Assembly (NCBI RefSeq): GCF_006345805.1
Contig: NC_043015.1
Location: forward strand, 15,066,001-15,130,000
DNA: 64,000 nt
Origin: Octopus sinensis
Lineage: Eukaryota
Direction: 5' to 3'
In this document: positions 8,962 through 62,499 of the stretch, one piece after another
How the letters are laid out: each line of letters begins with the position of its first letter
Numbering within the stretch: position 1 is the first letter of the stretch
Notes under the pieces: model-generated
The model's input: only the letters and a program-made list of their open reading frames with translations
Told to the model about the DNA's origin: nothing
The model's database searches: none
Program-made: the position numbers and the translations under genes

Positions 8962-9010
<49 letters not shown>

Positions 9011-9065: not shown

Positions 9066-9097
<32 letters not shown>

Positions 9098-9276: not shown

Positions 9277-9311
<35 letters not shown>

Positions 9312-9376
9312 CACATATATATTATATTATATATATAATATATATACACATATATATATATATATATTATATATAT

Positions 9377-9412
<36 letters not shown>

Positions 9413-9423
9413 CATATATATAG

Positions 9424-9489
<66 letters not shown>

Positions 9490-9679
9490 TATATATATAT
9501 ATATAGATACAAATATATATATATATATACACACATATAATATATATATATATACACACATATATATATTATATACACATATATATATATATAGATACAC
9601 ACAATATATATATATATATATACACACTATATATTATATATATATACACACATATATATAATATATATATACACACATA

Positions 9680-9713
<34 letters not shown>

Positions 9714-9791
9714 CCACATATATATATATATATACACATATATATATATATAATACACATATATATATATATACACATATATATTATATAT

Positions 9792-9832
<41 letters not shown>

Positions 9833-10035
9833 TATATAATATATATACACATATAATATATATATATAACATATATATATATAACACATATATATATATA
9901 TAACATACACACATATATATATATATATATGTGTATATATATATAATATATATACACATATATAATATATACATATATATAATATATATACATATATATA
10001 TATATATATATTACATATATATATATATACACATA

Positions 10036-10068
<33 letters not shown>

Positions 10069-10149
10069 TATAATACACATATATATATATATATACACAT
10101 TATATATACAATATATATATGTGTATATATATATATATATATATACACA

Positions 10150-10185
<36 letters not shown>

Positions 10186-10343
10186 ATATATATACACATA
10201 TATATATTATATATATATACCATATATATATATATATATACACATATATATATACACATATATATATATATACACATATATATATATATACAATATATAT
10301 ATATATCCACACATATATATATACATATATATAATATATATAC

Positions 10344-10381
<38 letters not shown>

Positions 10382-10441
10382 TATACACATATATTATATA
10401 TATAACACATATATATATACACATATATATATATATACACA

Positions 10442-10486
<45 letters not shown>

Positions 10487-10565
10487 ATATATATATAATA
10501 TATATACATTATATATATATATATATACACATATATATATATATATATAATATATATATATACAC

Positions 10566-10642
<77 letters not shown>

Positions 10643-10667
10643 TATAGATATATATATATATATACAC

Positions 10668-10701
<34 letters not shown>

Positions 10702-10811
10702 ACACATATATTATATATATATACATATATATACACACATATATATCTATATATATATATATATACACACATAATATATTATATAGATATATATATATAT
10801 ACACACATATA

Positions 10812-10844
<33 letters not shown>

Positions 10845-10935
10845 TATAGATATATATATAGATATACACATATATATAGATATATATATATATACACATA
10901 TATATAGATATATATATATATACACATATATATAG

Positions 10936-10985
<50 letters not shown>

Positions 10986-11186
10986 TATATATATATATAT
11001 ATATATACACATATATATATATATATATATTATATATACACATATATATATATATAATACACACATATATAATATATATATATACACACATATATATAGA
11101 TATATACACATATATATATATATATATATATATACACATTATATATATTATATATATATATATAACACATATATATATATATATAC

Positions 11187-11231
<45 letters not shown>

Positions 11232-11347
11232 TATATATATAGATACACAACATATATATATATTATACACAATATATATATAATATATATATACAATATA
11301 TATATATATATATACACACATATATATATATTATACATATATATATA

Positions 11348-11429
<82 letters not shown>

Positions 11430-11653
11430 TAATATATATATATAATATATATATATATATACACACATATATATATATAGATATATACACACATATATAT
11501 AATATAACACAATATATATATATATATATACACACATATATATATATATATATACACAATATATATATATATATATACACACATATATTATATAGATATA
11601 TATACACATATATATATATATAACACATATATATATAATATATATAACACATA

Positions 11654-11684
<31 letters not shown>

Positions 11685-11880
11685 TATATATATATATACA
11701 CATATATATTATATATAATATATATATACACATATATATATATATATATACACATATATATATATATATATATACACATATATATATATATATACACATA
11801 TATATATATATATACAACACATATATATATATATATATGTGTATATATATATATATATACACATATATATATATACATTA

Positions 11881-11919
<39 letters not shown>

Positions 11920-11925
11920 TACATA

Positions 11926-11957
<32 letters not shown>

Positions 11958-12220
11958 ACACATATATATATATATATACACACTATATATATACACATAT
12001 ATATATGTGTATATATATATATAATATATACACATATATATATATATATATTACATATATATATATTATATATACATATATATATATATATATAACAACA
12101 CATATATATATATATATACACATAATATATACACATATATATTATATATATAACATTATATATATATACATACACATATATATATATATATACATATATA
12201 CATAATATATACATATATAC

Positions 12221-12269
<49 letters not shown>

Positions 12270-12364
12270 TATATACATATATATATATATACACATATAT
12301 ATACACATATATATATATATATACACATATATATATATATATATACACATTAATATATATATAT

Positions 12365-12403
<39 letters not shown>

Positions 12404-12437
12404 TATATATATATATAGTATATATATATATAACACA

Positions 12438-12501
<64 letters not shown>

Positions 12502-12526
12502 TATATATATAATATATATATATACA

Positions 12527-12568
<42 letters not shown>

Positions 12569-12601
12569 CACACATATATATATATATATATATATACACA
12601 C

Positions 12602-12691
<90 letters not shown>

Positions 12692-12757
12692 TAATATATA
12701 CACACACACAATGGGCTTCTTTCAGTTTCTGTTTACTAAATCCACTCACATGGTTGA
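7780..12757 (-). mobile_element. tRNA-derived SINE (microsatellite-bearing family) hosting the 4.9-kb array
   Basis: 12711-12757 (atgggcttctttcagtttctgtttactaaatccactcac) and 7780-7822 match, in reverse complement, the sequences on either side of the internal (TA)n of the copy at 4770-5200. Confidence 0.7.
7817..12710. repeat. ~4.9-kb degenerate (TA)n/(TATATACACA) microsatellite-satellite array in tetraspanin intron 2
   Basis: Almost exclusively A/T with interspersed C on the + strand and rare G. It explains the many YI/IY/CV ORFs in the track. Confidence 0.98.
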
Positions 12758-12859: not shown

Positions 12860-13048
12860 AATGTAAAGCAAACAGGAATTTCCTTTAACAGTACAGCAAC
12901 AACCAATGGATCCAACAAGGACAATGACAGCACCAACTCCAATGAGAACATAAGGAGCTTCTTTATAATACAATGTGGACAATTCCATGTAGAGATATAA
13001 CTGTACTTTTGTCCATATCCCAATAGCAAGAATGGTAATGCCAGTAAT
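12860..13048 (-). CDS. TSPAN7: Tetraspanin coding exon 2: [63 protein letters not shown]
   Basis: 189 nt, phase 0-0, acceptor aatttacag, donor GTAAGT. Encodes the end of TM1, EC1, and TM2 with APYVLIG and G-CC motifs. Missed by the ORF track, which shows another frame. Confidence 0.95.
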
Positions 13049-20984: not shown

Positions 20985-21363
20985 TTTTCAGTTCTATCAA
21001 ATCCACTCACAAGGCTTTGATAAGGACTAAGGTTATAGTAGAAGACATTAGCCCAGGGTACTGTGCAGTGGAACTGAATCCAAAGTCACTTGGTAGGAAG
21101 TGAACTTCACCACACAGCCATATGCCATTTACACAAAATACATCTTTGACTTTTTCCTTGTTTCAGTCGTTTGAATGTGGCCATGCGGGGGCACTGCTAT
21201 GGAAAATTTTATACGACCAGTTTCTTTTAGTTTCTATCTACCAAATCCACTCACAAGGCTTTGGTCAGCCAAGACTACAGCCAAGGTGTCATACAGTGGG
21301 ACTGAACTCAGAATCATAAGGTTGAGAAGCAAGCTTCTTACCACACAGCTATGCCTGTGCCTA
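20985..21363 (-). mobile_element. Two 5'-half copies of the microsatellite-bearing SINE (20985-21125, 21228-21363)
   Basis: ttcagtttctatctaccaaatccactcacaaggctttggtc...ggactgaac...cttcttaccacacagc occurs twice. Confidence 0.75.
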
Positions 21364-24125: not shown

Positions 24126-26880
24126 ACAATGATAAGCAAAAGATAAGATATTCTCTGTGTGTCCACAGGAATACCAGATCCCTAATCTCTTTATTGTTTG
24201 AATGATTTGAGAAATAAAGACCTCTTTAGGTCATGAATGACCAATGGATGGCAACTAGAAAGTTACTCTCTGAGGCACAAGTCTGTGCAAAGTTGTTTAT
24301 GGAAGACCAGCAGTCACCCATGCATACCAGCCTCCCCTCTCCATGTCACCAATGTTATCCAAGGGAAACGCAAAGGTCGATACAGCTTGACACCAGTGAC
24401 ATCTCACAGCTGAGTGATCTGGAGTAATGTGACAAAGTGTTTTGCTGAAGAACACAACACAGCCAGGTCTGGGAATCAAACTCACTACCTCATAATTGTG
24501 AGCTTGACACTCTAACCACTGAGCCATGTGCCTTCACAATATGAAAAATAATGGGCAGATTTTATACACATACAAAACAATGATAAAAGGAGTAAGTAAT
24601 AACAAATAAGCAACCCAAAAATGTAGAGCTGGAAGAATATAAATGACTGTTACAAAAACAACTTATCTATAAAAACAATTCTGCTACTTACATCATCTTC
24701 TGGTATCATGCCAGTTATGGCTACTTATGATATATGTCTCTTATAAATTAATTACAAGATTATAATTGAAGATTTCTTTATCGTGGCAGAAGTTTAAACG
24801 ATTTGAAAGTTATCAATCACTGAATCAAATTGAACAGAACAGGATAACAAGGCCACAAATTTCATATTCCCACAAACACTCTTCAATGAAAGAAGAGTTT
24901 GAAATTATGGATGAGATTCAAGTAATTCCAGACAACTGTCAATCTCAACCTTAATTTTAACAGAAAAAGCTTTTGTTCTTTCATATTGGCTTTAACATAG
25001 TAGGCCCAGTCCACTCAGCTGATAAAAATGAGTTTTTCCTGTATTTCAAAGGGCCAGCCTTGTCACGTTCTGTGTCCTGCTGAATCTCCATGAGATTCGG
25101 TGTGTCTGTGGAATGCTCAGCCACTTGCAGGTGAATTTCATGAGCAGGCTGTTCAGTAGATCGAACCAATTGGAGCCCTGGTTGTCATAACATAGTAGAC
25201 ATATACAAGATGGTACAAACTTTAATAATGCTTTAAAATGAAGCAGCCAATGACAAACAGCAGAAAAATCTCCTTCAAACTATATCCTATTATCTTAAAA
25301 GGATGAATATACAGAATATACAGCATGGTTGGAATGCTCATAAAACTATGAAGAATAATTAAAGAAATTAGTAGAGAAAAGAGTTAGATCAGAGAATCAT
25401 TGTTTAAGGGTGTTAATAGGGATCTTGCCCCTCAGATTGAAATATCGTCTAGTACTGAAGAGGTTGGGGAAGAATTTTCATTTGGGGATTGTGTGCATGT
25501 CACCAAATAAGATCACAAAGAGCAGTTTGGGATAGAATTTTTCTGTTTATGTGTGGAATTGGAAGGAAAGGTGATGATTTCAGTCATATGCTTCAGTTTT
25601 GAAAAGGTCAGAGGTAAAGTAGATTTGCTACCAAAAATAATTGGATTAATAGACCTCTAATCAGTTAAGTTGATGAGAAGTCAACAGATAGTTCGAGAGG
25701 CTGAGGATGTTGTGTAGTTGTTGTTTATCCCTAGGCTGGCTCCGATGAAACTGCCAATATACATGGCAAAAAGATAACACACACACACACATGCACAAAA
25801 CACACACCCACAAAATATTCTTCTTCACAGATTCCATCTACCAAATCTATCAAATTGTGGTTGATATATCTGACTAAAACACTTGAAGATGGTACCCCAG
25901 CATGACTTTATTTAATCACAACCATCTAGTCTTTTATAATACATTTTAATGTGTCCTTCATTTTAAAAACAATAAGGTTTAATTTGAAGGGAATTTGGGT
26001 GTTATTTCTAGCGAGTTACAAAACAGCTTGAAAGTGGATTGCATTCACTAGGTAATGAACTAATAATCTTACAGGGTCAAAGGGTTTAATGGCAGAGTAA
26101 GGGAGAAGAAAGATGAGTTAATAAGCTAGATCACAGAAAGAATAGGGGAGGATATGTTTCAACATATATCCATCAACAGTGTTGATATAGAAGGAATGAC
26201 AAAAACAGATGTTAGCTTTGGATTCAAGGAGCAGAAATATTTCAGATGGGGATGAATAGAAATAAAACCCTTCAATTCAGGAGAAAAAATAGATAAATAA
26301 ATAAGATGGTGAGAGTAGCCGCCCTATTTTTACTACAACTGCCACTGTGACAACTGTCTTAAAAGCCAGTGCCAATCAAAAGTGGATAACTTGTCTACCA
26401 TCAGCAGACTGATAATGATTGAGAGCACAGATATAGCTGAGTGGTTATGTTTGCTACATGACCATGTGGTCTCAAACTGAATCCTATTATGTGTAATCAT
26501 GTGGGGGAACTGTCTTGTACCATTCCTTACAGTTGATGAATGGTAAATTAAATTTGGTAGATGGGGAATTATTTATAGAATATGTGATTATATGTACATG
26601 GCTAACACTTAGTGGCAAAAAAGAATTGTGCTAAATGAGAATGATGATGAGTATGCATATTTCAATGGCTAAGGGGTCAGGTACTTCAACCATCACCACT
26701 CCTTGCTACACATTGCAGTCATGTGTTTCACCTGTACACTTCACTAGGGTCCTCCCAGTCATCTTGATGTAATTGTTTCATTTACGTCTTTGTTACTCAT
26801 AAGCCTGTTTTTCATCCATTCAGCCCGAGAATATGGGCCCAGAGGTTCTGAGCCAAATATAGCAATTTTTACTGTCTGAC

Positions 26881-27506
26881 TTCAGAGAAATTGTATATAG
26901 TTAGGTTCCATTTGGATGACAACAAATGAATGAGGAACTTTAAGGAGTTTATACCTGCACAGAGGTATAGAGTTAACAATGTGGACAGAAACTGTACAAG
27001 CTGTGTTGTATGATGTAACCCTAGACAAGACTGAAACATTATATATCACAAAGACATAAATATTCTATTTCCTTATATATTGCAATTTGTAAACAATTGT
27101 CTTGGTTAGAGGTTTCCAATAAATCAATAACTCAATACTTTTCTAATGGTGACAGTGACAAAGGAAGTTTGTAACTTAATGCAGAACAAATATCTTAAAG
27201 GACATTATTTACAAAGCATCATTTTCTTCTTCATTGATAGACAGAAAAGATAATACACCTACATTGTAATGTCCAGTTTTTCCTACTTGCATGAGTTGGA
27301 GGGAGTTTACTGAGGGCAGATTATCTACAATCAGATGCCCTTGCTGTCACCAACACTCACCTGCTTCCCAGCAAGGAAATATTTCCTCATGGCCAGACAA
27401 TTTTCCAGAATATTGGAAACTAGCTTAAGGTGACCTGCTCTATGCACAGGTAAGAGTGTGGTTGTTACTTTCTGTTGCTTCCTTTCTGCTTCTATCACCA
27501 CATTCT
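26881..27506 (+). repeat. 626-bp non-tandem direct duplicate of 27998-28623
   Basis: Constant offset of 1117 nt and near-identity; I saw one substitution (atgAgttgga vs atgGgttgga). Confidence 0.92.
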
Positions 27507-28536
27507 ACAAGTTTTTTCTTCTCATCCCATTTCTTCTAGGATCCGGCCATCCATTCAACTAATCTGCAGCACTCCCTTGTAGCATATCATCTCAAACACT
27601 AAGTCACTTAGTGTCTGCTGGCTTTAGAGCCTATCCTTCATCCATACAATGCTACAAGATAAATCAAAACTTCTAGAAGCTTGAAAATTCTATCACAGTT
27701 GCTTTCTCTTTAACTCAATTGACTTTGTCTTTTGTACTCTTCTAAGGTTGATAAAATGAGTACCAGGTGAAGCAGACTAAAACCCTTGAAAGTGGTGCTC
27801 CTGCATAATCAAAGTACATAGGTGAAAACCAGTAAAAACAATAAAAGGGATTGATGATATGATTCAATAGTGCATTGTTCATCACAAGTAGGAATATGAT
27901 TTGCATGTCTTCTCTATAATTATAGTGACTAAGATTCATTCAACAACTCCAACACAATATCATTATACTCCAATTCAAGGTGTTTTCAAGATCCCAGTTC
28001 AGAGAAATTGTATATAGTTAGGTTCCATTTGGATGACAACAAATGAATGAGGAACTTTAAGGAGTTTATACCTGCACAGAGGTATAGAGTTAACAATGTG
28101 GACAGAAACTGTACAAGCTGTGTTGTATGATGTAACCCTAGACAAGACTGAAACATTATATATCACAAAGACATAAATATTCTATTTCCTTATATATTGC
28201 AATTTGTAAACAATTGTCTTGGTTAGAGGTTTCCAATAAATCAATAACTCAATACTTTTCTAATGGTGACAGTGACAAAGGAAGTTTGTAACTTAATGCA
28301 GAACAAATATCTTAAAGGACATTATTTACAAAGCATCATTTTCTTCTTCATTGATAGACAGAAAAGATAATACACCTACATTGTAATGTCCAGTTTTTCC
28401 TACTTGCATGGGTTGGAGGGAGTTTACTGAGGGCAGATTATCTACAATCAGATGCCCTTGCTGTCACCAACACTCACCTGCTTCCCAGCAAGGAAATATT
28501 TCCTCATGGCCAGACAATTTTCCAGAATATTGGAAA

Positions 28537-29838
28537 CTAGCTTAAGGTGACCTGCTCTATGCACAGGTAAGAGTGTGGTTGTTACTTTCTGTTGCTTCCT
28601 TTCTGCTTCTATCACCACATTCTCCCTCTTTGTTTCTCTCTCCTTTCTCTCCCACTTTCCCACTCTCTTACTCTTCCTTTCTCTCGGACTCTCCCTCGCT
28701 TTCTCTTACTCTCTATCTTTCTCTATCTCTCTCTCTCCCATTTATAAACAACAAAACATCTTGAGTAAGTTGAGAAAGAAATAGTTTGAAAGATCAATCA
28801 TAAATATCAGGCAGTGACAACGGAAAGGCCTGCTTCAAGGCAGACAGCAAAACACTAACATTTAAAAGGGACAGACAAACTTGCAAGCTGAATAAAAATT
28901 AAAAAATATTGGAAACCAAAGTTTGAAGGGATAGAATCTGAGTATAGTAGAGTCATCATAGCTGGCACTTCTTAAAGACGGACAGCAACGTAGTGGCAGT
29001 TTAACGGCTGGTGTAAAATTTTGAACTTGATGTAAAAGAAAATTCCTAAACACCAAGTTTTGAAGTGATTCTTTCTCACGACAGTAGACTCACCATGGCA
29101 AGTATTCAAAACTTCATCATGGACAGCAACACATTGACGATTTAAAGGCTGGCGCAAATTTTTTAGCTTGATGTAACCAAGAATTCCTAACCACCTACTC
29201 CTGTAAATTTTAATCCCCTTCCAGCCCCATTTAGACCCCTTTTCACATTTTTGTTAATATAACCCGATTTCATTTGGGTCTACTCGGGCCACATTTTATA
29301 AGATGAGGAATTTTGTCCTAGAGGTCAAGCTTTTCATTTGAGGAAAAAAATAGTTACCATGCAAACTCGCCAGCACTTTTAACATAGGTGTGCATATTTT
29401 CAGCTCAACCGACCACATAATGCACACATTATATATATATATATAGCCATTAAATATATATATGTACATATATACACATTATATATATGTGTGTGTATGT
29501 ACACATTATATATACAAATGTATACAAATTATATATATATATATACATGTATATATATAAATACAGATATATATACTTTGTATATATACATTATATATAC
29601 ATATTTATATATAGAACACACACACACACATATAAACCCAATAAATATCTGATTCATAATATTTGTTCTCATGATTGTGTGGCGTGGTGGCGATGATAAT
29701 TCTCTCTATTAATGCAGACAGACGGAGAGAGAGAGAGTGTGACAACGCTGGCGAAGGCAGTGGGGGAAAGATAGTAGACGCTGTCAAACGACGTTATAGA
29801 GAGAAAGTGAAAGGAAGGGATGAAAGAGAGAGAGATGG
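28537..29838 (-). mobile_element. 5'-truncated copy of the same Helitron family in intron 1
   Basis: Reverse-complement match to 38656-40052. Hairpin acctgtgcatagagcaggt, 9-nt spacer, then CTAG|T at 28537-28540. Confidence 0.75.
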
Positions 29839-30014
29839 AACAAAAATCTGGCAAGCAAGCACTTCACTTCTGTACTCTAGGCATAACATGTCAGTACTCG
29901 AGACTGACACAACCAGAAACTGATGTGCCCACACAACATTAGTTTTCATCGGGAAAATATAAAGTCTGATACTCTTTGAATGCACTTTGTATATATAAGA
30001 AGGTGTTTGTGTGT

Positions 30015-30895: not shown

Positions 30896-31802
30896 TGTTT
30901 CTTTATTAGCCACACAGGGCTGAACACAAAGGGGACAAATTACAAAGAAGAGCTTTTCTTTTTGGAGATAAAAATTTATCTCCAAAAAGAAAAGCTCTTC
31001 AAAGCTCTTCAAAAGTGGGTTGGTTTTCGTTCAAAAGGGATCGTAAATGGAAAGAAAGAGAAAAGCAAAAGAAAAAAAGGAAAAACAAAGAAGAAAAAAA
31101 GTAAAAAGAAAAAATCGATCAATAGGGATCGTTATCACAGAAATGTCAATGTAAAGTGTAAAAGGGAAGACAGGTGAGGTTTACCCATGGAAAGAAAAGC
31201 CTACAGAAAAGACCACGGTAACCTCGGTCAATGAAGTCACATGTTATATTTTTTTACAAATAAGCAACTCTCTGTATTAATTTTTACGGTTCATAGGATC
31301 ATAGTCAAGGTGGCTTCATCATTCATACGTGCCATCCTTGCTACAGTCACCCATCTTTTTTTAAAACATTTACTAGACAAAACTTGCCTCTCTACTTTCA
31401 ATTTCCTTTTCAAGTGATACTTGAAGAAGTTGATGAGAGATTGACCAGAGAGGAAAGTGTTTGTCTCTAATCCTTTCAGGCGCATCCACCAGATACATTC
31501 TTTCGCCATAGCCACAAGTATGATAAAAAATAGCTCTTCCTTCCCGTTTGAAGGAAGGAGGCGTGATGATATTAATGATAGACTTGGCTGATAAACCGAC
31601 TCATCCCACACGTGACAGCAGTCATTCGACATAAGCCCACAGGTCGGAGATTGTTGGACACTGCACGATTGTGTGCAGAACGGTTTCGTCGCTCAGACCG
31701 TATCTCGGGCAGGTTGGCCCCGAGTTTCTCAAGCCATGCCTATAGAGCTTATCCCGAATGGGTAGCACTTCTCGGCAGCACTGCCAGGCCAGGGATCTCT
31801 GG
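30896..31802 (-). mobile_element. 3' portion of a Tx1/L1-clade LINE (zf-RVT region) between (AGAT/AGAC)n runs
   Basis: Translates SLAWQCCREVLPIRDKLYRHG...TCPRYG..DETVLHTIVQCPTISDLWAYVE, the zf-RVT signature, with stops downstream. Confidence 0.75.
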
Positions 31803-32155
31803 CCAGAGATAGATAGATAGACAGACAGACAGATAGATAGACAGACAAATAGATAGATAGACAGACAAATAGATAGACAGACAGATAGATAGATAACATC
31901 CACTTTTCCATGCATACATGGATTAGATGGAATTTGTTGAGACAGATTTTCTATGTCTGAATGCCCTTCCAGTTGCCAACTCTCACCTGTTTCCAAGTAA
32001 GGTAATATTTCCCCATTTCCAAACATATTTTTCACAGAGGACTGGAGCAAGGGTACATTCAACTCATACTCTCCCCCCATATATATTATGAATTAATTGC
32101 ATGGCAATTTTTAACATTTATGTATTAGTCTTGTTATATGTGTATATGTATATTA

Positions 32156-35746: not shown

Positions 35747-35839
35747 CCAAAACATGAAGTTGAAAACCATAAGTAACGTTTTCATACAAGTCACCACTGG
35801 AGCCGACACCATAGCTGACTGCATCCGATTTTTAGACAT
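35747..35839 (-). CDS. TSPAN7: Tetraspanin-7-like (TSPAN6/7 family), first coding exon: MSKNRMQSAMVSAPVVTCMKTLLMVFNFMFW
   Basis: 93 nt, ending TGG|GTAAGT (donor 35741-35746). PVVTCMKTLLMVFNFMFW|ITG matches the TSPAN6/7 N-terminus and TM1 (human TSPAN7 PVITCLKTLLIIYSFVFWITG, from memory). Orthology to TSPAN7 rather than TSPAN6 is not resolved. Confidence 0.9.
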
Positions 35840-38420: not shown

Positions 38421-39019
38421 TCAATATCTATAAATCTGAAATGCGAAAAGTTTGTTTGTCTGGTTTTGGCATTGGAACGGGTTAAAGGCCACTAGATCCC
38501 GTCAGATTGACTCCAAAATTTACAAGGACATGTAAAATGAGGTGAGGATGTGAGTGGGCTAGGTTAGAAATCCTTATCTTAAAAGATGTCATTACTAGGG
38601 CAAAAAACGCACACTTTGACAAGTCTCTTCTCATTCTCTTATCTGCATGTCTTCCTCCGTCTCTCTCTGTTTCCTCCCTTCCCATCACTTTCTCTGTATA
38701 ACGACGTTTGACAGATACTACTATCTCCCCACCCGTCCCCGGTGCATTTGCCAGTGCTGTCCCTCTTTTCCCCACCGCCTCCCTCTCTTTCTCTCTCTCT
38801 CTACGTCTGTCTGTCTACATTCATAGAGAGTTTTATTATCACCACCACAACCACCACACAATCATGAGAACAAATATTATGAATCAGATATTTATTGGGT
38901 TAATTTATATATATGTGTGTGTGTGTTCTATATATAAATATGTATATATAATGTATATATACAAAGTGTATATATCTGTATTTATATATATATATATTAT
39001 ATATATATATATATATATG

Positions 39020-39061
<42 letters not shown>

Positions 39062-41814
39062 GTATACATTTGTATATATAATACATACACACACACACTC
39101 ATATATATATATGTGTGCATTATGTGGTTGGTTGAGCTGAAAATATGCACACCTATGTCAAAAGTGCTGGCGAGTTTGCATGGCAACTATTTTTTCCCTC
39201 AAATGAAAGGCATGACCTCTAGGACAAAATTCCTCATCTTATAAAATGTGGCCCGAGTAAACCCGAATGAAATCGGGTTATATTAACCAAAATGTGAAAA
39301 GGGGCCTAAATGGGGCTGAGTGGGTGTTTAGGAATTCTCTGTTACATGAAGCTAAAAAATTTGCGCTAGCCTTTTAATCGTCAATGTGTTGCCGTCCATG
39401 ATGAAGAAGTTTTGAATGCTTGCCATGGTGAGTCTACTGTCGTGAGAAAGAATCACTTCAAAACTTGGTGTTTAGGAATTTTCTTTTACATCAAGTTCAA
39501 AATTTTACGCCAGCCGTTAAACTGTCAATACGTTGCTGTCCGTCGTTAAGAAATGCCAGCCATGGTGACTCTACTATCCTAAGATTCTATCCCTTCAAAC
39601 TTTGGTTTCCAATATTATTTTATTTTTATTCAGCTTGCAAGTTCGTCTGTCCCTTTTAAATGTTAGTGTTTTGCTGTCTGCCTTGAAGCAGACCTTTCCG
39701 TTGTCACTGCCTGATATTTATGATTGATTGATTTTGATTTTGATTTTTCCAGTTTCAGCTAATGAGCTGTGGCCATGCTGGGGCACCGCCATTTCTTTCT
39801 AAAAATTTTATTTCTCAACTTACTCAAGATCTTTTGTTGTTTATAAATGGGAGAGAGATAGATAGAGAAAGATAGAGAGTAAGAGAAAGCGAGGAAGAGT
39901 CCGAGAGAAAGGAAGAGTAAGAGAGTGGGAAAGTGGGAGAGAAAGGAGAGAGAAACAAAGAGGGAGAATGTGGTGATAAAAAGCAGGAAGGAAGCAACAG
40001 AAAGTAACAACCACACTCTTACCTGCGCATAGAGCGGGTCACCTTAAGCTACTTTCCAATATTCTGGAAAATTGTCTGGCCATGAGGAAATATTTCCTTG
40101 CTGGGAAGCAGGTGAGTGTTGGTGACAGCAAGGGCATCTGATTGTAGATAATCTGCCCTCAGTAAACTCCCTCCAACCCATGCAAGTAGGAAAAACTGGA
40201 CATTACAATGTATGTGTATTATCTTTTCTGTCTATCAATGAAAAAGAAAATGATGCTTTGTAAATAATGTCCTTTAAGATATTTGTTCTGTATTAAGTTA
40301 CAAACTTCCTTTGTCACTGTCACCATTAGAAAAGTAATGAGTCATTGATTTATTGGAAACCTCTAACCAAGACAATTGTTTACAAATTGCAATATATAAG
40401 GAAATAGAATATTTATGTCTTTGTGATATATAATGTTATTGTCTTGTCTAGGGTTACATCATACAACACAGCTTGTACAGTTTTTGTCCACGTTGTTAAC
40501 TCTATACCTCTGTGCAGGTATAAACTCCTTAAAGTTCCTCATTCATGTGTTGTCGTCCAAATATATACAATTTCTCTGAACTGGGATCTTGAAAACACCT
40601 TGAATTGGAGTATAATGTTATTGTCTTGGAGTTGTTAAATGAATCTTAGTCGCTATAATTATAGAGAAGACATGCAAATCATATTCCTACTTGTGATGAA
40701 CAATGCACTATTGAATCATATCATCAATCCCTTTTATTGTTTTTACTGGTTTTCACCTATGTACTTTGATTATGCAGGAGCACCACTTTCAAGGGTTTTA
40801 GTCTGCTTCACCTGGTACTCATTTTATCAACCTTAGAAGAGTACAAAAGACAAAGTCAATTGAGTTAAAGAGAAAGCAACTGTGATAGAATTTTCAAGCT
40901 TCTAGAAGTTTTGATTTATCTTGTAGCATTGTATGGATGAAGGATAGGCTCTAAAGCCAGCAGACACTAAGTGACTTAGTGTTTGAGATGATATGCTACA
41001 AGGGAGTGCTGCAGATTAGTTGAATGGATGGCCGGATCCTAGAAGAAATGGGAGGAGAAGAAAAAACTTGTAGCAACAGTCAGACAGTAAAAATTGCTAT
41101 ATTTGGCTCAGAACCTCTGGGCCCATATTCTCGGGCTGAATGGATGAAAAACAGACTTATGAGTAACAAAGACGTAAATGAAACAATTACATCAAGATGA
41201 CTGGGAGGACCCTAGTGAAGTGTACAGGTGAAGCACATGACTGCAATGTGTAGCAAGGAGTGGTGGTGGTTGAAGTACCTGACCCCTTAGCCATTGAAAT
41301 ATGCATACTCATCATCATTCTCATTTAGCACAATTCTTTTTTTGTCACTAAGTGTTAGCCATGTACATATAATCACATATTCTATAAATAATTCCCCATC
41401 TACCAAATTTAATTTACCATTCATCAACTGTAAGGAATGGTACAAGACAGTTATTGGCACTGGCTTTTAAGACAGTTGTCACAGTGGCAGTTAGTGTTTT
41501 GCTGGCTGCCTTGAAGCAGGCCTTTCGGTTGTCACTGCCTGATATTTATGATTGATCTTTCAAACTATTTTCTTTCTCAACTTACTCAAGATCTTTTGCT
41601 GTTTATAAATGGGATAGAGATAGATAGAGAAAGATAGAGAGTAAGAGAAAGCGAGGGAGAGTCCGAGAGAAAGGAAAAGTAAGAGAGTGGGAAAGTGGGA
41701 GAGAAAGGAGAGAGAAACAAAGAGGGAGAATGTAGTGATAAAAAGCAGAAAGGAAGCAACAGAAAGTAACAACCACACTCTTACCTGCGCATAGAGTGGG
41801 TCACCTTAAGCTAG
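38421..41814 (+). mobile_element. Composite non-autonomous Helitron with captured host sequence
   Basis: A|TCAATATCTATAAATC 5' end. Internal hairpin plus CTAC (mutated terminus) at 40021-40052. Second hairpin plus CTAG|T at 41783-41815. 40053-41492 is reverse-complementary to tetraspanin intron 1 sequence at 26340-28536. Confidence 0.72.
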
Positions 41815-41904: not shown

Positions 41905-42169
41905 TAAATCCCCTCGAAAAAACGAAGAACAAATACAAAAAACAACAACGTGAGGACGTAGTACATGTAAAGTATTAGCTGATGCTCAGGGAAGGAAAGA
42001 AAGGTGTCTTCAGAAGAGAGGAAAGTCCAAAAGTAAAGAAAGACAGAGGAAAAAAAATCACCAATGATTCACATGTGGTTACATTTTTACATATATGTAT
42101 ATGTATACACACACATACACACACACACACATACACACACACACACATATATGTGTGTATATATATATA

Positions 42170-43053
42170 TGAGGTGGTGTCAAGGTTCCTAGACTAATTA
42201 TGCTTAATAAAAAATAAGTTATTTAGCTAAGTTTTAACATCATCACCTTCGAAATAGCCACCTTGTACAGAAATACAGTGTCCCTGTCTCTTTTGGAATC
42301 CGGCCTAGAGTTGTTTCCCTTTTGCATGTTGAGGACCTTCTGTAATTCGCTCTTTATCTTGACAATGGTATTAAAACGGCGACCTTTGAGCTGCATCTTC
42401 ATCTTGGGGAAGAGATGGAAGTCTGCAGGTGCTAATTCTGGTGAATAAGGTGGATGCAGAAGTGATACAGTGTTGTTTTTGTAAGAAAGAGAAGAGCTCA
42501 GTGATAGGGTGCATTGTCGTCATGAAAAATTCAGTCTGCACTCCACTGATTCAGTTGCTTTCAGTGAATCTCCTCCCTCAAACCCTTCAAAACATCATTG
42601 ATTGTCCTCCAACAATCTTCATGCACAAGCTAATAAATTTTCTCCACGTTTCCAGGAGTGACACTCATGGCAGGTCTTCCAGATCGCTCATTGTCTTCCA
42701 GGGACATTCTTCCACTTCCGAAGTGCCCGTACCACTCGAAACAGTGCGTATGATCCATTACATAATCACTGTAAGCTTGACGAAGCATGCTCAGTACAAA
42801 CTTCCCAAGTTTAATGCAAAACTTCACATTGGCTCTTTGTTTCCAACTTGCTGACCATGACAAAAAATCACAGACTGCAGCATCCATGTCATTACAAAAA
42901 CACAAATTTCACAGCTTTCAAAGTAGACACAGTGATATCACTCTCCACACTATCTCTTGAAAGTCACTGCTAGCTCTTACTGTGCACACAACTGTGTGCT
43001 GCCATCTGTGGGTGCACTACAGAACTAGTCTGGGAATTTTTGATACCACCTCA
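42170..43053 (-). mobile_element. Second internally deleted mariner of the same family
   Basis: TA|TGAGGTGGTGTCAA...TTGATACCACCTCA|TA. ORF 42630-42905 gives QRANVKFCIKLGK...LRQAY...FEWY..F.SGRMSLEDNERSGRP. Confidence 0.9.
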
Positions 43054-52753: not shown

Positions 52754-55565
52754 CATCATCATCATCATTTCACACCTGCTTTCCATGCTGGCATGGGTTG
52801 GATGGTTTGACTCAGAACTGGCAAGCCAGGAGGCTGCACCAGGCTCCAATCTGATTTGACAAGGTTTCTACAGCTAGATACCCTTCCTAATGCCAACCAC
52901 TCCAGGTGTGTATGGGTGCTTCAATGTTCCGATGGCATGGGAGCCAGCCAGGTGGCACTGGCATCTGCCACTCGCAAATGGTGCTTTTTTCATGCCCCCA
53001 GCACGGGTGCCAGTCAGGCAGGACAGGCATCAGTCATGCTTGAATGGTGTAATTTACATGTCACTGGCACGGGTGCCAGCCAGGTGGCACACGCATCAGC
53101 CATGCTTGAATGGTACTTTCTACATGCCATTGGCACAGGTGCCAGTCAGGTGGCACTGGCATCGGCCATGCTCAAATGGTGCTTTTTACATGCCACCTGC
53201 ACAGGTGCCAGTGCTGCTGGACTGGCATCGACCATGCTCAAATGGTGCATTTTACATGCCACCAGTATGGGTGTCAGTCAGGCAGCACTGGCATTGGCCA
53301 TGATCACATTCTTGCTTGGCTTGCCGAGTCTTCTCAAGCACAGCATATCACGAAACATCTTGCTCACTTGTCATTGCCTCTGTGAGGCCCAACGTTCGAA
53401 AGTCGTGTTTCATCACCTCATCTCATATCTTCCTGGGTCTACCTCTTCCACAGGTTCCCTCCACTGTTAGGGTGTGACACTTCTTTAGACAGCCGTCCTC
53501 ATCCATATGCATCACATAACCATAACTTTGCAGTTATCTCTCTTGCACACCACAACTGATGTCTCTTATGTCCAACTTTTCTCTCAGGGCACTTACATTC
53601 TGTTGTGTATGCACACTGATATTTAACATCCAATGGAGCATACAAGCTTCATTTCTTTCAAGTTTATGCATGTCCTCAGTAGTCACAGCCCATACTTCAC
53701 TGCTGTATAGCATGGGTGTATGCACACAAGCATCATGCAGTCTATATTTCACTCTGAGCAAGAGGCCCTTTGTTACCAGCAGAGGTAAGATCCCTCTGAA
53801 CTTTGCCCAGGCTATTCTTATTTTAGAGCCATGCTCTCAGAGAAGCCACTCTCTGCTACTGACTTGGTTGCCTAGGTAACGGAAGCTATCAACTACTTCT
53901 AGTTTTTCCCTCTGGCATGTGATAGAATGTTTTGTATACATCTTTGGTGTTTATTGCACCTGTGCATCTGCCACACACAAAAGCTATTTTCCCAGTTAAA
54001 TTTCCTTTGATATTGCTACATCTCTTATGTGTCCATAGCTTACACCGAGTACATCTTATGGAGTTCCTACCTACACCTTTTCTACAGATAAAGCAGGGTT
54101 ATATACCTGAAATGATTTGTGATTTGTCTGCCTTCCTACTTACTAAGACTTTAGTTTTGTTAGGTTAAGTCTAAGGCCCTTCAATTCTAGACCTTGCTTC
54201 CATACCTGAAACTTCTCTAGTTCTTGTAGTGACTCAGCTATTAGAGCAAGGTCATCAGCATAGAAGAGCTCCCAGGGGCAGCCTGTCTTCAATTCCTTTG
54301 TAATTGCCTGGAGGACTATGATGAACAAGAGGGGACTGAAGACTAATCCTTGGTAAACTCCTACTTCTACTTGGAATTTTTTGCTACACTTGTTACCAAC
54401 CCTCACCCTACTGACTGCATCCCTGTACATGGTTTGTACAACTCACCAACCACTCATCTATCCCTCATTTCCACATTGACCACTAGATAAAAGATCAAGG
54501 GGACCCTGTCAAAGGCTTTCTCCAAGTCAACACAAAAGCCAAGTACAGAGGTTTATCTTTGGCTAGGAATTTCTCTTGCAGCTGTCTTACCAGAAATATA
54601 GCATCAGTGGTGCTTTTCCCTGGCACAAACCCAAACTGCATCTCATCTAAGCTAACTCTCTTCCAAATTAGTTGGGCTATGACCTCTCTGTGACTTTCAT
54701 TACCTGATCCAACAGTTTGATTCCTCTGTAATTATTTCTAAGGCATCACCTTTACCTTTGTAGCAGTTGACTATGGTGCTGTTACACCAGTCATTGGGTA
54801 TGACTCCTTCGTACATCACCAGGTTAACTATACAAGTGACTAGACTTTTCCCTAAACTGTCAGATATTTTAAGCATCTCAGCAGTGATTCCTGATGGGCC
54901 AGGAGCTTTCCCTGTCTTCATACTCTTAATTGCTTTATCTGCCAAGGTACTGTAAATTCGGATAACTGGTCCTTCTGTTGGGTTGACATTTGGCAGATTC
55001 TCTTACTCCCATTCATTCTCTTTGTTTAGTAATCTTTAATAGTGACATCTCCAAGTCTCTCACTTTGCAGCATCATTAAATGCAAGTGAGCTATCATCCA
55101 TGTGGACACATCCTCTCCTATGACATCAGGATTTTCTCTCGCACGCTGTCATGCAATTCAAAATACTTCAAGTTTCTGGTCCTCATAGTACAGAACATTG
55201 GCAGATTTCTTCTTATCTGCTTCCCCTCTGGCTAAATAAATCTGTCTCCTAGTTTCCTTTCTGGTGATCTGATGCTACCACTCTTCCAGTCCTTCCATGC
55301 CTTTTACTTTTTCCTAAAGGCCCTGTCAACTACAATGTTCCACTACCATGTCACCTTAGGTCACTAGTGTACTTTGCACCAGCCACAGATCTGGTCAGTA
55401 GCCCAGGTTGTCTTCCACATTATGTGATGCTATATCCTCCTCTTTTTCATCAAAAGCTTCAAGTAATACATCTCTAAATCTCTGTCCATTCAGAGGATCC
55501 TTAAGCTTTCAAACCCTTCTTTTCCACACTGGTTGTTTGGGCAGCCATTTAGCCCTGATCATAAA
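52754..55565 (-). mobile_element. 5'-truncated, frameshifted RTE-clade LINE with 63-bp minisatellite in the 3' UTR and (ATG)n tail
   Basis: RT motifs KAPGPSG, QFGFVPG-like, GVYQGLVFSPLLF, LFYADDLALIA and PMLYSSEVW in ORFs 54700-54945, 54143-54430 and 53534-53761. catcatcat tail at 52754-52766. Confidence 0.9.
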
Positions 55566-59350: not shown

Positions 59351-60261
59351 TGAGGTGGTATCAAAAAGTTCCTTGACTAGTTCTGTAGTATGCCAACAGA
59401 TGGCAGCACTTGGTTGCATGTGCAATGACAGCTAGTAGTGACTTTCATAAGGCAGTGTGCCGAGTGACATCACTGTTTACTTAGCAAGTTGTGAAATTTG
59501 TTTTTGTGATTGCATGTATGCTGAAGTCTGCCATTTTTGTCATGGACAGGAAGTTGGAACAAAGAACTAATGTGAAATTTTGTATTAAATTTTGGAAGTC
59601 TGCTAAAGAAATATTGAGCATACTTCGGCAAGCTTACGGCAATGAGGCAGTTGGTTGTACGCAATGTTTTGAGTGGCATGGGCATTTCAAAAGTGGAAGA
59701 ACGTCCCTGGAAGATGATGAGCAAGTTAGAAGACCTGCCACAAGCATCACCCCTGGAAATGTGGTATTGTGCTTTGAGAATTCATTCCCCAGGGCCAAAC
59801 TGTCAATCAAGAGTTCTGCTGTGACATTTTGCAGTGTTTGAGGGAGGACATTCAGTAAAAGTGACTGGATCTGTGGAGCATGGTGAACTGGATTCTTCAC
59901 AATGACAATGTGCCCTGTCACCAAGTTCTCCTCACTCATGAGTTTCTCACCAAAAAACAACATGGTGTCACTTCTGCACCCAATCATCCTATCATCAGAT
60001 TTAGCACCTGCAGACTTCCCAAGATAAAAATGTAGCTCAAAGGTTGCCATTTTAACACCATTGTCGAGATCCTGAGTGAATCGCCGAAGATCCTTGATTT
60101 TCTTACAGAAAACGACCTCCAGGCTGGATTTCAAAAGTGGCAGGAATTCTGAGATCGGTGTAATGCTGCACAGAATGACTATTTTGAAGGAGATGTGTTA
60201 AAACTCAGATAAATAAGTTATTTTTTATTAAACATACCTAGTTTGTTTTGACACCACCTTG
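59351..60261 (+). mobile_element. Internally deleted mariner transposon with TIRs and TA TSD
   Basis: TA|TGAGGTGGTATCAAAA...TTTTGACACCACCTTG|TA. Translates EQRTNVKFC..K.A.E...LRQAYG..FEWH..FKSGRTSLEDD..RP, then GQTVNQEF-like and HDN-like motifs with frameshifts. Confidence 0.9.
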
Positions 60262-62499
60262 TATATATTACTAATGCTTTGAGTTCTATTTCTCTTGTAT
60301 TATCAAACTTCTATATTTATCTCAAGTAATGTAACATCTTATGAATATGTAATTACTTTTATAGTTTACAATCTAAGCATTACTATGTATTATTTAGACC
60401 TGTAATACATTTGTGTGAATTACACTGATTTCGTTTCTTTGTAAGTATGTATTGCCTGTGTGTTATGTGTGTGTGTGTGCATGTGTGTACATTTGTGTAT
60501 GAATAATTGCCCACATCTTGGATATGTATCTTTGTGCATCCTGTATTATATTCATTATTTCACTTTTCTTTCTCTTTCTCTCTCTTTGCAAAGTTCATTC
60601 TTTTGACTTTACCATGCTCTATTTTCAGCTGACCTGGTTAATCTTACTAACTTTAACCCCCCCCCCACCTCTCTTCTCTTCACTTCTTTGTACTACTTTC
60701 CACTCCATTCATACTGTCAAGGATGGATGGATGGGGAGTGGGTCCTATTAGTCTTTCCCTTTAACATTGCCTCCCTATTTCTCTTTTCCTTAGCAACCAT
60801 GCTACTAGCATACATGTTTCTTTTCTCTTCAAAGAAGGATAAAAGTCAGAAATAATTAATTTTTCACTCCTCACAGCAAACCTAAGTTTTGTACTTGAGT
60901 CTGGATCTTACCTTCTTCCTTCCATAGTTGGTCTTATGCCTTTAGTTCTCTTGTTTCATTGTCATACATCTTCTTTAGCATGTTTCCATCAAATCTTTTT
61001 CTTATGTAGAGAGAGGAACTCTTTGCTGTTGATAGATCTGGTTATTCCTACTCTGTATTTTTAGTTAGAGGAGGAAAGATGGTACCCATGGCACTTTTCA
61101 GGCTCTACTACAGGGAGAAAGTTATTTATAGACAGCTTGCAGTAAAGGGGCAGCTCTATCGCATGACTTTTAGAGGACCCCTGCAATTTTTTGTTTCAAG
61201 GCCCCATCCCTTCAATCAAAATTCATAATCTATGCACCTTTTAGTCATAACTATATTTTATTTTATTCTTTCTGAAGTTCAATATTTCACCTTATGCTAA
61301 AAAACATCTATAAAAGTACAACAAGTTAAATTTATTTAGGTCTATTACAAATTTCAATAAGTAAAACTTCCAGATATGAATAAAAGAGCACTTTTATAAT
61401 CCAGGCAACTTTTAAAGACAAACATAGCGCACTTTTCACTTTGTGAAATCATTGATCATTTCAAAATAATCAAGCTGAGAGCTAAGTTTGTGTTCAAAAG
61501 ATATAGACAATCCACAAAGTCTGTTACATGTTTGTGGTAGAATGTAATATTTTTACAAGAACTTTTGCAGTTCCAATATATTACCATTTTATTTCTTGAA
61601 ATTTTCCATTAACATAGTTTAATTCTTGTTCAACATCTTTACCAAAGTAAATAGATGACTCATCTACATACTTTGATCTTAACATGGGGTCCCTCAACTG
61701 CAAAGGCCCCCTGCATCTGTAGGAGTTGCAGGGGCTAAGTGATGTCCCTGCAAAGGGGATTATGCTGAAGGCACCAAAGGGCCAGATACCTTAAACTTCT
61801 TGTCACTGCACTTAAATTCTGAATCCCAAATCATCTCTTGTTCTACATTCTGTCTGAAAAATGGTAGATAACATGATCTTCTCAGTTTCAGTTAGTTGAG
61901 AGCAATTGACACTTTTCAGATGTTTTTATATTTTGGCAGGAAAGAAAAAGAAAAAAAGGGCAAAAACACTGTTTTTATTCCAAGATCTAGATGTCATGGA
62001 TATTATTCTCAGAAACATGGAAGAAGTAAATACCTAGACATAGACTTCAGAGACACGACAATACAAATAATAAATAATAGCCTGAGGGTGATGTTGTGGA
62101 TTTGATCCTGTGTTTTGCTACATAGAAATCCCAATTCAATCATGTGTACAACCAAGATTTTAACTGATGAATGGCCATTTTATCCAATGAATGGTCTAAT
62201 TAGAACTTTCTATCAGCAAGGCCTACAAATACAGCCAAATGGAGGGCCAAAGATTCAAGGTGTCTCAGATTGAGTTGGCATACACTCTCCTAATGCCTGG
62301 AATGATTGTCAAAGGAGACATACCATGGCACCTGAATATGTATTTGATATGTAAAAATTAGCACAAATGTTGACTTTGTAACAAAGACTTTCTATATGTA
62401 TCATATTGAGTTGTTTCATATGAATGTTTCCATTGATTTATTGCATGGACATCTTTACTATTAAACAAATAAATTATTTTTCCAGTACATGAAGAAGCG

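What the first reader, a model, noticed from the sequence alone, without database searches (positions are those of the whole stretch)
38421..41814. Helitron end-bypass capture of host intron with acquisition of a new 3' terminus
Seen: the unit starts A|TC and ends hairpin+CTAG|T. Its first terminator (40049-40052) reads CTAC, whereas the intronic copy has CTAG (28537-28540). Past that terminator it continues for ~1.4 kb as a reverse-complement copy of tetraspanin intron 1 (28536 back to ~26340, lacking 26367-26508 and 26881-27506). It then switches at a 3-nt GTT microhomology (~41490) to a second copy of the last ~320 bp of the Helitron. Established: terminator bypass and new-end acquisition are proposed mechanisms of Helitron gene capture. 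Inference: the intronic copy was the donor and later lost its 5' end; the locus preserves donor and product 9 kb apart.
Basis: partly seen in the sequence, partly recalled or inferred. Interest (0 to 1): 0.8.

Follow-up and report, generated by a model that had tools for sequence, protein, structure and literature searches.

The report
Helitron-like repeat carrying copied intron flank
A non-coding, Helitron-like repeat upstream of a mollusc tetraspanin gene carries 1.44 kb copied from the flank of a sister copy in the gene's first intron, then a second copy of its own tail; the structure is real, but host DNA repair explains it at least as well as transposon read-through.

Summary
Unit A (38421-41814, +) is a non-coding repeat ending CTAC, then 1,440 bp colinear with the reverse complement of tetraspanin intron 1 (28536 to 26337), then a 3-nt GTT junction, then a second 325-bp copy of the repeat's tail ending CTAG|T. 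Copy B in the intron has the same repeat/flank junction, so the flank was copied from a B-type locus into A.

"Helitron" is plausible but unproven. The CTAG|T 3' end is delimited by two different flanks. The 5' A|TC exists in one copy only. The hairpin is no better than shuffled sequence. No other family copy could be reached.

"End-bypass transposition" is not demonstrated:
- A-B divergence is three-tiered (about 6%, 2.8%, 0.6%), not uniform.
- B lacks the 5' end a donor needs, and has no tail copy downstream of the flank.
- The flank/tail-2 junction is a microhomology join.
- The one Helitron tested experimentally does not hop locally.
- B itself has a 626-bp local duplication that crosses the repeat/flank boundary.

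I favour (0.45) an ordinary copy at A that was broken and repaired using inverted copy B as template, over read-through transposition (0.30). Interest is modest.

The parts
38421..40052 (+). Copy A of the Helitron-like non-coding repeat (body plus tail 1). It starts TC after A and ends CTAC.
   Evidence: ORFs within it have no Pfam hit.
38421..38655 (+). 5' segment present only in copy A. It carries the claimed A|TC 5' terminus. An alternative A|TC lies at 38426/38427.
   Evidence: alignment: no homology with B upstream of A 38656 / B 29839; no other copy in the window.
38929..39080 (.). Internal (TA)n microsatellite of the repeat, also present in copy B.
   Evidence: (TRF).
39323..39606 (+). 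Two diverged tandem units of about 144 bp (73% identical) inside the repeat body.
39662..40052 (+). Tail 1. This is the stretch that is repeated as tail 2. It ends with the weak hairpin ACCTGC/GCGGGT and then CTAC.
39729..39793 (+). 65-bp segment found only in tail 1. Together with 39800-39812 it forms a SINE-like patch of about 75 bp (79% identical to 21145-21200). Tail 2 and B's tail share a short common sequence at this position.
40053..41492 (+). Copied flank: reverse complement of tetraspanin intron 1, 28536 to 26337, minus the two B-only segments. The first 150 bp or so is an old dispersed SINE-like repeat.
40653..41492 (+). Distal block of the copied flank, with only 0.6% divergence from B. 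The likely cause is later gene conversion.
   Evidence: maximum-likelihood change point at 40653 (support 40638-40710), 0 of 500 permutations reach it..
41072..41078 (+). 7-bp AGCAACA at the site where B carries the 626-bp duplication.
41490..41492 (+). GTT microhomology at the flank/tail-2 junction.
   Evidence: three-way comparison of the junction with both parents.
41490..41814 (+). Tail 2: second copy of the last 325 bp of the repeat, without the 65-bp patch. It ends CTAG|T against a (TA)n microsatellite.
28537..29839 (-). Copy B of the repeat, in tetraspanin intron 1 and in the same orientation as the gene. It lacks the 5' 235 bp and ends CTAG|T.
26337..28536 (-). Intron sequence 3' of copy B. 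This is the template of the copied flank.
26881..27506 (-). B-only 626-bp duplicate of 27998-28623, with 1 mismatch. It contains the last 88 bp of the tail, CTAG and 535 bp of flank, so it crosses the repeat/flank boundary.
26377..26507 (-). 131 bp present in B and absent from A. The junction is blunt, with no TSD.
35747..35839 (-). Tetraspanin exon 1 (CDS part). Donor site is gtaagt.
12860..13048 (-). Tetraspanin exon 2. It defines intron 1 as 13049-35746.

Best explanation
Two copies of one non-autonomous, Helitron-like repeat lie 9 kb apart in opposite orientation. Copy B is in tetraspanin intron 1. An originally ordinary copy, A0, lay 2.6 kb upstream of the gene, inserted at an A|T site in a TA-rich microsatellite.

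Proposed sequence of events (inferred):
1. A break or collapsed replication fork occurred in A0 at or just upstream of position 39661.
2. The broken end invaded the homologous copy B.
3. Repair synthesis ran through B's tail, past its CTAG end, and 1.44 kb into B's intron flank.
4. The new strand was rejoined to the other broken end at a 3-nt GTT microhomology.

The result is: A0 body, then a B-derived tail (tail 1), then B's flank, then A0's own tail (tail 2). Later gene conversion between the inverted repeats homogenised the distal 0.8 kb. Later again, B acquired a local 626-bp templated duplication.

Shown directly: the architecture, the identical repeat/flank junction in A and B, the microhomology join, the tiered divergence, and the boundary-crossing duplication in B. 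Inferred: the pre-existing A0 copy and the break-repair pathway.
For: - The tail-1/flank junction is identical to B's junction. Unit A is still closed by a canonical CTAG|T, and it opens with A|TC. An ordinary insertion later expanded from inside would look like this.
- The flank/tail-2 join uses 3 nt of microhomology. About 5% of random joins would have 3 nt or more. Such joins are typical of end joining or template switching, not of Rep cleavage.
- A-B divergence steps down from about 6% to 2.8% near 39620-39830. The model predicts a step at or before 39661. Body up to 39661 versus 39662-40652 gives Fisher p = 0.007-0.019. A second step to 0.6% occurs at 40653 (0 of 500 permutations).
- Repair-type footprints occur in the same tract: a SINE-like templated patch of about 75 bp in tail 1 only, and a 7-bp filler at 41072-41078.
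- B's 626-bp duplicate carries 88 bp of tail, CTAG and flank. It can only be a local templated duplication, so this kind of event has happened at this locus.
- B needs no 5' end in this model. It has none.
- A nearby template is expected for ectopic repair. Helraiser transposition shows no local hopping (PMC4778049).
Against: - The three tails form a star, with about 5, 8 and 6 private changes. Tail 2 is not clearly older than tail 1, although the model predicts it should be. Tail 2 versus B's tail is 3.7%, against about 6% for the body. The counts are small, and both values lie within the confidence interval.
- The first change point has a wide support interval (39350-40680).
- Normal synthesis-dependent strand annealing should have re-annealed within the tail homology rather than overshooting by 1.44 kb.
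- The model needs two independent insertions within 12 kb, and the family's copy number is unknown.
- No intermediate (A0 without the flank) has been observed.
Confidence: 0.45

Rival explanations
1. Unit A is the product of one Helitron transposition from the intronic copy. The transposase missed B's CTAG terminator, carried 1.44 kb of intron along, and the unit acquired a second tail copy as its new terminator before inserting at A|T 38420/41815. A variant is chimeric transposition from a donor that already had a tail fragment downstream.
For: - The CTAG|T 3' end is delimited by two different flanks, unit A begins A|TC, and there is no TIR or TSD.
- The repeat/flank junction is shared with B.
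- The three tails form a star phylogeny, consistent with one simultaneous origin.
- Read-through occurs in about 11.7% of Helraiser events, and the right terminal sequence is dispensable (PMC4778049).
- Chimeric elements that end in another Helitron's 3' end are documented in bats (PMC4224331).
Against: - Divergence is not uniform: about 6%, 2.8% and 0.6%. Two later conversion events would be needed.
- B lacks the 5' 235 bp, yet the left terminal sequence is required for transposition.
- B has no tail copy after 26337.
- The mobilised strand is displaced rather than synthesised, so the GTT junction is not a transposase product.
- No local hopping was seen in 701 Helraiser events. A product landing within 10 kb of its donor in a gigabase-scale genome has a prior of about 1e-5.
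- CTAC is a private change in the product, not in the donor.
Confidence: 0.3
2. The repeat is not a Helitron. It is a 5'-truncating retroposon (a SINE or non-autonomous LINE without a poly(A) tail) or an unclassified repeat. Unit A arose by read-through 3' transduction at the RNA level, or by plain inverted segmental duplication with the repeat as a passenger.
For: - Copy B is 5'-truncated while the 3' ends are precise, which is the usual pattern for LINE-type copies.
- The hairpin is not significant.
- The 5' TC is unverified.
- No Rep/helicase is present in the window, whereas LINE reverse transcriptase fragments are.
- B lies in the sense orientation within an intron, so it is transcribed together with its flank.
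Against: - There is no poly(A) or simple-repeat tail at B's 3' end, and no TSD beyond a trivial TA.
- Unit A's right border coincides exactly with the repeat's own 3' end. A passenger in a random duplication would not show this.
- RNA-level transduction does not explain tail 2 or the GTT join.
- CTAG followed by T in two flank contexts fits the Helitron CTRR|T rule (PMC4067079).
Confidence: 0.12
3. Assembly artefact. Mis-joined or collapsed repeat copies created the tail duplication and the 626-bp near-identical duplicate.
For: - The window is extremely repeat-rich and microsatellite-rich.
- The 626-bp duplicate differs from its source by a single base.
Against: - A and B differ by 65 substitutions and many indels, spread along 2.3 kb. 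The three tails each carry private changes. These are therefore distinct loci.
- The junctions are clean and are not located in low-complexity sequence.
Confidence: 0.05

Closest known systems
Helitron 3' transduction by end bypass or read-through (Feschotte & Wessler 2001; shown experimentally with Helraiser, PMC4778049)
   Same: An element ending in CTAG is followed in the new copy by the sequence that flanks another copy's 3' end. The 1.44 kb carried along is similar in size to the 1.6-kb cassette transduced experimentally.
   Different: - The new end is a copy of the element's own tail, joined by microhomology. It is not a cryptic terminator in the flank.
- The putative donor lacks a 5' end.
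- Divergence is tiered rather than uniform.
- The donor and product are 9 kb apart, although Helraiser does not hop locally.
Chimeric or compound Helitrons that use a neighbouring Helitron's 3' end (Tempel 2007; HelibatN539 in PMC4224331)
   Same: The architecture is element, then host DNA, then a 5'-truncated tail ending CTAG.
   Different: In those cases the downstream tail is an independent insertion at the donor locus. Here the donor locus (B) has no tail at the corresponding point (26337). The tail copy in B at 27419-27506 belongs to a duplication that also carries flank sequence.
Templated insertions from ectopic break repair or replication template switching (SDSA with over-extension, BIR/MMBIR)
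   Same: - Copying starts by homology from a nearby inverted repeat and runs off the end of the homology.
- The final join uses a 3-nt microhomology.
- Short templated patches are present.
- A second local templated duplication is present at the partner locus.
   Different: The pathway is inferred from sequence alone. No break site, intermediate or polymorphism has been observed.
Helentron-associated HINE / DINE-1-like elements of molluscs (PMC4067079, PMC7492417)
   Same: Non-coding, with an internal microsatellite and central tandem repeats.
   Different: There are no subterminal inverted repeats, and the insertion context is A|T rather than T|T.

Membership tests
Canonical (non-autonomous) Helitron | 3' terminus CTRR | tested here: met
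   CTAG lies exactly where homology ends, against two unrelated flanks: 41811-41814|TATATA and 28540-28537 (reverse complement)|TTTCCAAT.
Canonical (non-autonomous) Helitron | 5' terminus TC | tested here: inconclusive
   TC is present at 38421-38422, but the 5' 235 bp exists in one copy only, so the boundary is not delimited. A second candidate lies at 38427-38428.
Canonical (non-autonomous) Helitron | 16-20 nt palindrome about 11 bp from the 3' end | tested here: inconclusive
   6-bp stem (one G-T pair), 7-nt loop, 13 nt from the end. Energy is -3.4 to -5.2 kcal/mol, with z-scores +0.17 to -1.02 against shuffles.
Canonical (non-autonomous) Helitron | Insertion between A and T without target-site duplication; no terminal inverted repeats | tested here: met
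   A|TC...CTAG|T for unit A, and CTAG|T for B. There is no TSD beyond a TA that is trivial in a TA microsatellite. The best terminal inverted match is 7 nt, reached by 40-46% of shuffles. No empty site was available.
Canonical (non-autonomous) Helitron | Multi-copy family with shared termini and an autonomous Rep/helicase partner | not testable with these tools
   The source genome and its close relatives are absent from every searchable collection. The window holds only these copies and no Rep/Hel ORF.
Product of Helitron end-bypass transposition | The product carries the donor's 3' flank contiguous with the element end | tested here: met
   Junctions are identical in A and B apart from CTAC versus CTAG: AAGCTA(C/G)|TTTCCAATATTCTGG. 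1,440 bp are colinear.
Product of Helitron end-bypass transposition | Element and transduced flank copied in one event, giving uniform divergence from the donor | tested here: not met
   Body 5.3-6%, tail 1 plus proximal flank 2.8%, distal flank 0.6%. Element versus flank gives Fisher p = 7e-7. The change point at 40653 is reached by 0 of 500 permutations.
Product of Helitron end-bypass transposition | The donor has an intact 5' end (LTS) and, for the chimeric variant, a terminator at the downstream breakpoint | tested here: not met
   B starts at the equivalent of A 38656 and has no 5' segment. B continues as unrelated intron sequence beyond 26337.
Product of Helitron end-bypass transposition | Empty A|T site at orthologous or allelic loci | not testable with these tools
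   The closest tetraspanin relatives found are 70-79% identical gastropod proteins. No alignable non-coding orthologue exists in the collections.
Helentron / HINE (DINE-1-like) | 12-15 bp subterminal inverted repeats; T|T target | tested here: not met
   There are no subterminal inverted repeats, and the flanks are A and T. Criteria are taken from PMC4067079.
Templated repair insertion (SDSA / MMBIR type) | Homologous template nearby, microhomology at the exit junction, additional templated patches | tested here: met
   An inverted copy lies 9 kb away. The exit junction is GTT. There is a SINE-like patch at 39739-39812. B has a 626-bp boundary-crossing duplicate with 1-2 nt junction overlaps. 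These features are consistent with this mechanism but not exclusive to it.

The most novel reading that the evidence does not exclude
The locus preserves, within 15 kb, both the donor and the product of a Helitron 3' read-through event in a mollusc. The new terminator was created by a template switch back onto the element's own tail. This would be a natural snapshot of how multi-terminus, gene-capturing Helitrons are born. It would also be evidence that this Helitron lineage can reinsert locally.
Probability: 0.25. Interest if true: 0.55.

Novelty: new member of a known kind. Interest (0 to 1): 0.3.

Why it matters
Helitron gene capture is usually inferred from end products whose donors are lost. 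A locus that keeps both the template and the copy allows the competing models to be tested base by base.

The base-level evidence here argues for caution. An architecture that looks like textbook end bypass plus a new terminus (element, then host DNA, then element tail) can also be produced by ordinary homology-driven repair between two nearby copies. If that is common, some catalogued Helitron "captures" and "de novo 3' ends" may be repair products rather than transposition products.

The practical consequences for the tetraspanin gene are probably nil. The copied DNA is intronic repeat-rich sequence placed 2.6 kb upstream of the start codon.

Tried and rejected
1. I searched the 5.8-billion-protein collection with a spurious ORF spanning B's repeat/flank junction, hoping to recover other family copies. 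There was no candidate.
2. I searched with tetraspanin exon 1 plus read-through. There was no candidate. The spliced exons 1-3 returned only relatives at 79% identity or less. No orthologous locus was therefore available and no empty-site test was possible.
3. Two exact-pattern scans of metagenome contigs with the 3' subterminal sequence gave 0 hits.
4. The supplement of the Octopus repeat-annotation paper does not hold the terminus.
I found the exons by reading stop-to-stop segments instead.
6. Helentron/HINE and TIR-element classifications were rejected: no subterminal or terminal inverted repeats.
7. CpG decay does not explain the divergence tiers. They persist when CpG sites are excluded.
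8. I looked for a mosaic pattern in tail 1, with the 5' part resembling tail 2 and the 3' part resembling B. None was found. The private changes are interleaved.
9. I considered the 7-bp AGCAACA in A as a remnant of B's 626-bp duplicate. The evidence is too weak: the informative core is 5 nt, and the duplicate is only 0.16% diverged from its source against about 3% for A versus B.
10. I considered CTAC as the cause of the bypass. It is a private change in the product, so it is not informative.
Full report
**What is there**

The window is AT-rich (67%) eukaryotic DNA, full of microsatellites and dispersed repeats.

Unit A lies on the + strand and consists of:
- A non-coding repeat, 38421-40052, ending CTAC.
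- 1,440 bp (40053-41492) colinear with the reverse complement of 28536-26337.
- A second copy (41490-41814) of the repeat's last 325 bp, ending CTAG and followed by T and a (TA)n tract.

Copy B of the repeat lies on the minus strand at 29839-28537. It ends CTAG|T, followed by the same sequence that follows tail 1 in A.

B has two segments that A lacks:
- 131 bp at 26377-26507.
- 626 bp at 26881-27506. This is a near-perfect duplicate (1 mismatch) of 27998-28623.

The junction between the copied flank and tail 2 shares exactly GTT with both parents.

**Gene context**

- Exon 1 of a tetraspanin (ATG at 35839, donor gtaagt), exon 2 (12860-13048) and exon 3 (6946-7020) lie on the minus strand, with canonical splice sites.
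- The spliced peptide hits Pfam Tetraspanin at E=1.8e-22.
- Intron 1 is 13049-35746. Copy B is intronic and in the sense orientation. Unit A lies 2.6 kb upstream of the ATG in the opposite orientation.
- The best database relatives are gastropod tetraspanins at 70-79% identity, so the host is a mollusc with no close relative in the collections.
- From memory the dispersed repeats look cephalopod-like. That is a lead, not a result.

**Is the repeat a Helitron?**

The criteria come from PMC4067079: 5' TC, 3' CTRR, a 16-20 nt palindrome about 11 bp from the 3' end, insertion between A and T, and no TSD.

- The 3' end is well defined. Homology among tail 1, tail 2, B's tail and the partial tail in B's duplicate stops at CTAG (CTAC in tail 1). 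Two unrelated flanks follow, and both begin with T.
- The 5' end is not defined. A/B homology starts abruptly at A 38656 / B 29839, so A|TC at 38420/38421 rests on one copy. Another A|TC lies 6 bp inside.
- The hairpin has a 6-bp stem with a G-T pair, and is no more stable than shuffled sequence.
- There are no terminal or subterminal inverted repeats, which excludes TIR elements and Helentron/HINE.
- The element's ORFs have no Pfam match.
- The window contains no Rep/helicase and no further copies.
- Every attempt to reach other copies or a consensus failed.

Verdict: Helitron-like is plausible. Membership is unproven.

**Direction of copying**

The repeat's 3' end is independently defined by tail 2's flank. 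The B junction (CTAG|TTTCCAAT...) is therefore a genuine insertion junction with intron DNA. The first 150 bp or so of that DNA is an old dispersed SINE-like repeat (74% to 31894-32034), which is host sequence and not part of the element. A's tail-1/flank junction is the same junction, so A's flank was copied from a B-type locus.

**Test of the single-event (end-bypass) model**

If A were one read-through copy of B, then the body, tail 1 and flank should be equally diverged from B. They are not.

| Region | Substitutions | Divergence |
|---|---|---|
| Body 39125-39728 | 32/601 | 5.3% |
| Tail 1 | 12/257 | 4.7% |
| Proximal flank 40053-40682 | 16/630 | 2.5% |
| Distal flank 40683-41492 | 5/805 | 0.6% |

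- Element versus flank gives Fisher p = 7e-7, and 9e-6 without CpG sites.
- The best single change point is at 40653 (support 40638-40710). None of 500 permutations reach it.
- A two-change-point fit gives about 6%, then 2.8%, then 0.6%. The first step is at 39623-39833, with a wide support interval of 39350-40680.
- Body up to 39661 versus 39662-40652 gives p = 0.007-0.019.
- The three tails form a star, with about 5, 8 and 6 private changes and no mosaic. CTAC is one private change of tail 1.

**Mechanistic constraints from the literature**

- Helraiser requires the left end, while the right end is dispensable.
- The intact element reads through in about 11.7% of events. New ends are cryptic sequences in the flank.
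- In bat genomes, de novo ends often come from adjacent 5'-truncated Helitrons (PMC4778049; PMC4224331).
- Helraiser shows no local hopping in 701 re-transpositions.

Against this background, four features of the locus do not fit:
- B today has neither a 5' end nor a tail fragment at 26337.
- The flank/tail-2 join is a microhomology junction.
- In a peel-and-paste mechanism the mobilised strand is displaced rather than synthesised, so such a junction must be a host repair product.
- A 9-kb distance between donor and product is improbable for an episomal intermediate.

**Preferred explanation**

An ordinary copy A0 at the A|T site suffered a break at or upstream of 39661. It invaded the inverted copy B. 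Synthesis ran through B's tail and 1.44 kb into B's flank. The new strand was rejoined to A0's other end at GTT.

This accounts for:
- The canonical outer borders of unit A.
- The shared inner junction.
- The duplicated tail.
- The microhomology join.
- The step in divergence near 39661.
- B's missing 5' end being irrelevant.
- The proximity of the two copies.

Repair-type footprints are present in the same tract: a SINE-like templated patch of about 75 bp, found only in tail 1, and a 7-bp filler. B's 626-bp duplicate carries 88 bp of tail, CTAG and flank. It crosses the element boundary and cannot be a Helitron insertion, so this locus demonstrably undergoes local templated duplication. The 0.6% distal block is best read as later gene conversion between the inverted repeats. 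The 626-bp duplicate, at 0.16% divergence from its source, is later still.

Weaknesses:
- Tail 2 is not clearly older than tail 1.
- The first change point is loosely placed.
- Overshooting the available homology is unusual for strand annealing.
- Two independent insertions within 12 kb are required.

I give the repair model 0.45, read-through or chimeric transposition 0.30, a non-Helitron origin or passenger duplication 0.12, and assembly artefact 0.05.

**Novelty and interest**

Helitron 3' transduction, chimeric termini and templated repair insertions are all established. At most this is a new example in a mollusc, with the useful property that template and copy sit side by side. I class it as a new member of a known kind, with interest 0.3. 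The decisive data are the family consensus and copy census in the source genome, sister-species or haplotype alleles of both loci, and long-read confirmation. None of these is available with the tools here.

Noticed in passing
window 26881-27506 vs 27998-28623: A 626-bp direct duplication inside tetraspanin intron 1, with 1 mismatch (99.84%). It carries the last 88 bp of the repeat tail, CTAG and 535 bp of flank. It is inserted about 490 bp downstream of its source, with 1-2 nt overlaps at the junctions. At the same site copy A has only AGCAACA.
   Followed up: yes
window ~7800-12700: An imperfect TA/TATACA-type microsatellite or satellite tract of about 4.9 kb fills most of tetraspanin intron 2, between exon 2 (12860-13048) and exon 3 (6946-7020). 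It dominates unmasked self-BLAST output.
   Followed up: partly
window 53534-54945 (-): Fragmented LINE-type reverse transcriptase ORFs. The ORF at 54143-54430 hits Pfam RVT_1 at E=6.7e-10.
   Followed up: partly
window 31291-32080 (-): An ORF with a zf-RVT domain (E=3e-6), likely the 3' part of a LINE ORF2, about 1.5 kb from copy B. It is adjacent to a SINE-like repeat (31894-32034) related to the first 150 bp of the copied flank.
   Followed up: partly
window 42163-42905 and 59491-60268: Two diverged mariner-type transposon remnants. Both have weak HTH_48 (Mos1) hits, and 42163-42260 is 80% identical to 60268-60176. The first begins only about 350 bp to the right of unit A.
   Followed up: partly
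window 39263-39285: A perfect 7-bp palindrome, AACCCGA(atgaaa)TCGGGTT, inside the repeat body. It is degraded in copy B. Its function, if any, is unknown.
   Followed up: no
window 26377-26507: A 131-bp segment present in B and absent from A, with blunt junctions and no TSD. It contains a tRNA-like motif (GCTGAGTGGTTA) suggestive of a SINE head. It has no other copy in the window.
   Followed up: partly
window 40026, 40036 and equivalents in tail 2 and B's tail: All three changes in the 3' hairpin arms among the tails are CpG transitions that keep the arms pairable through G-T or A-T pairs. This looks like CpG decay rather than selected compensation.
   Followed up: partly
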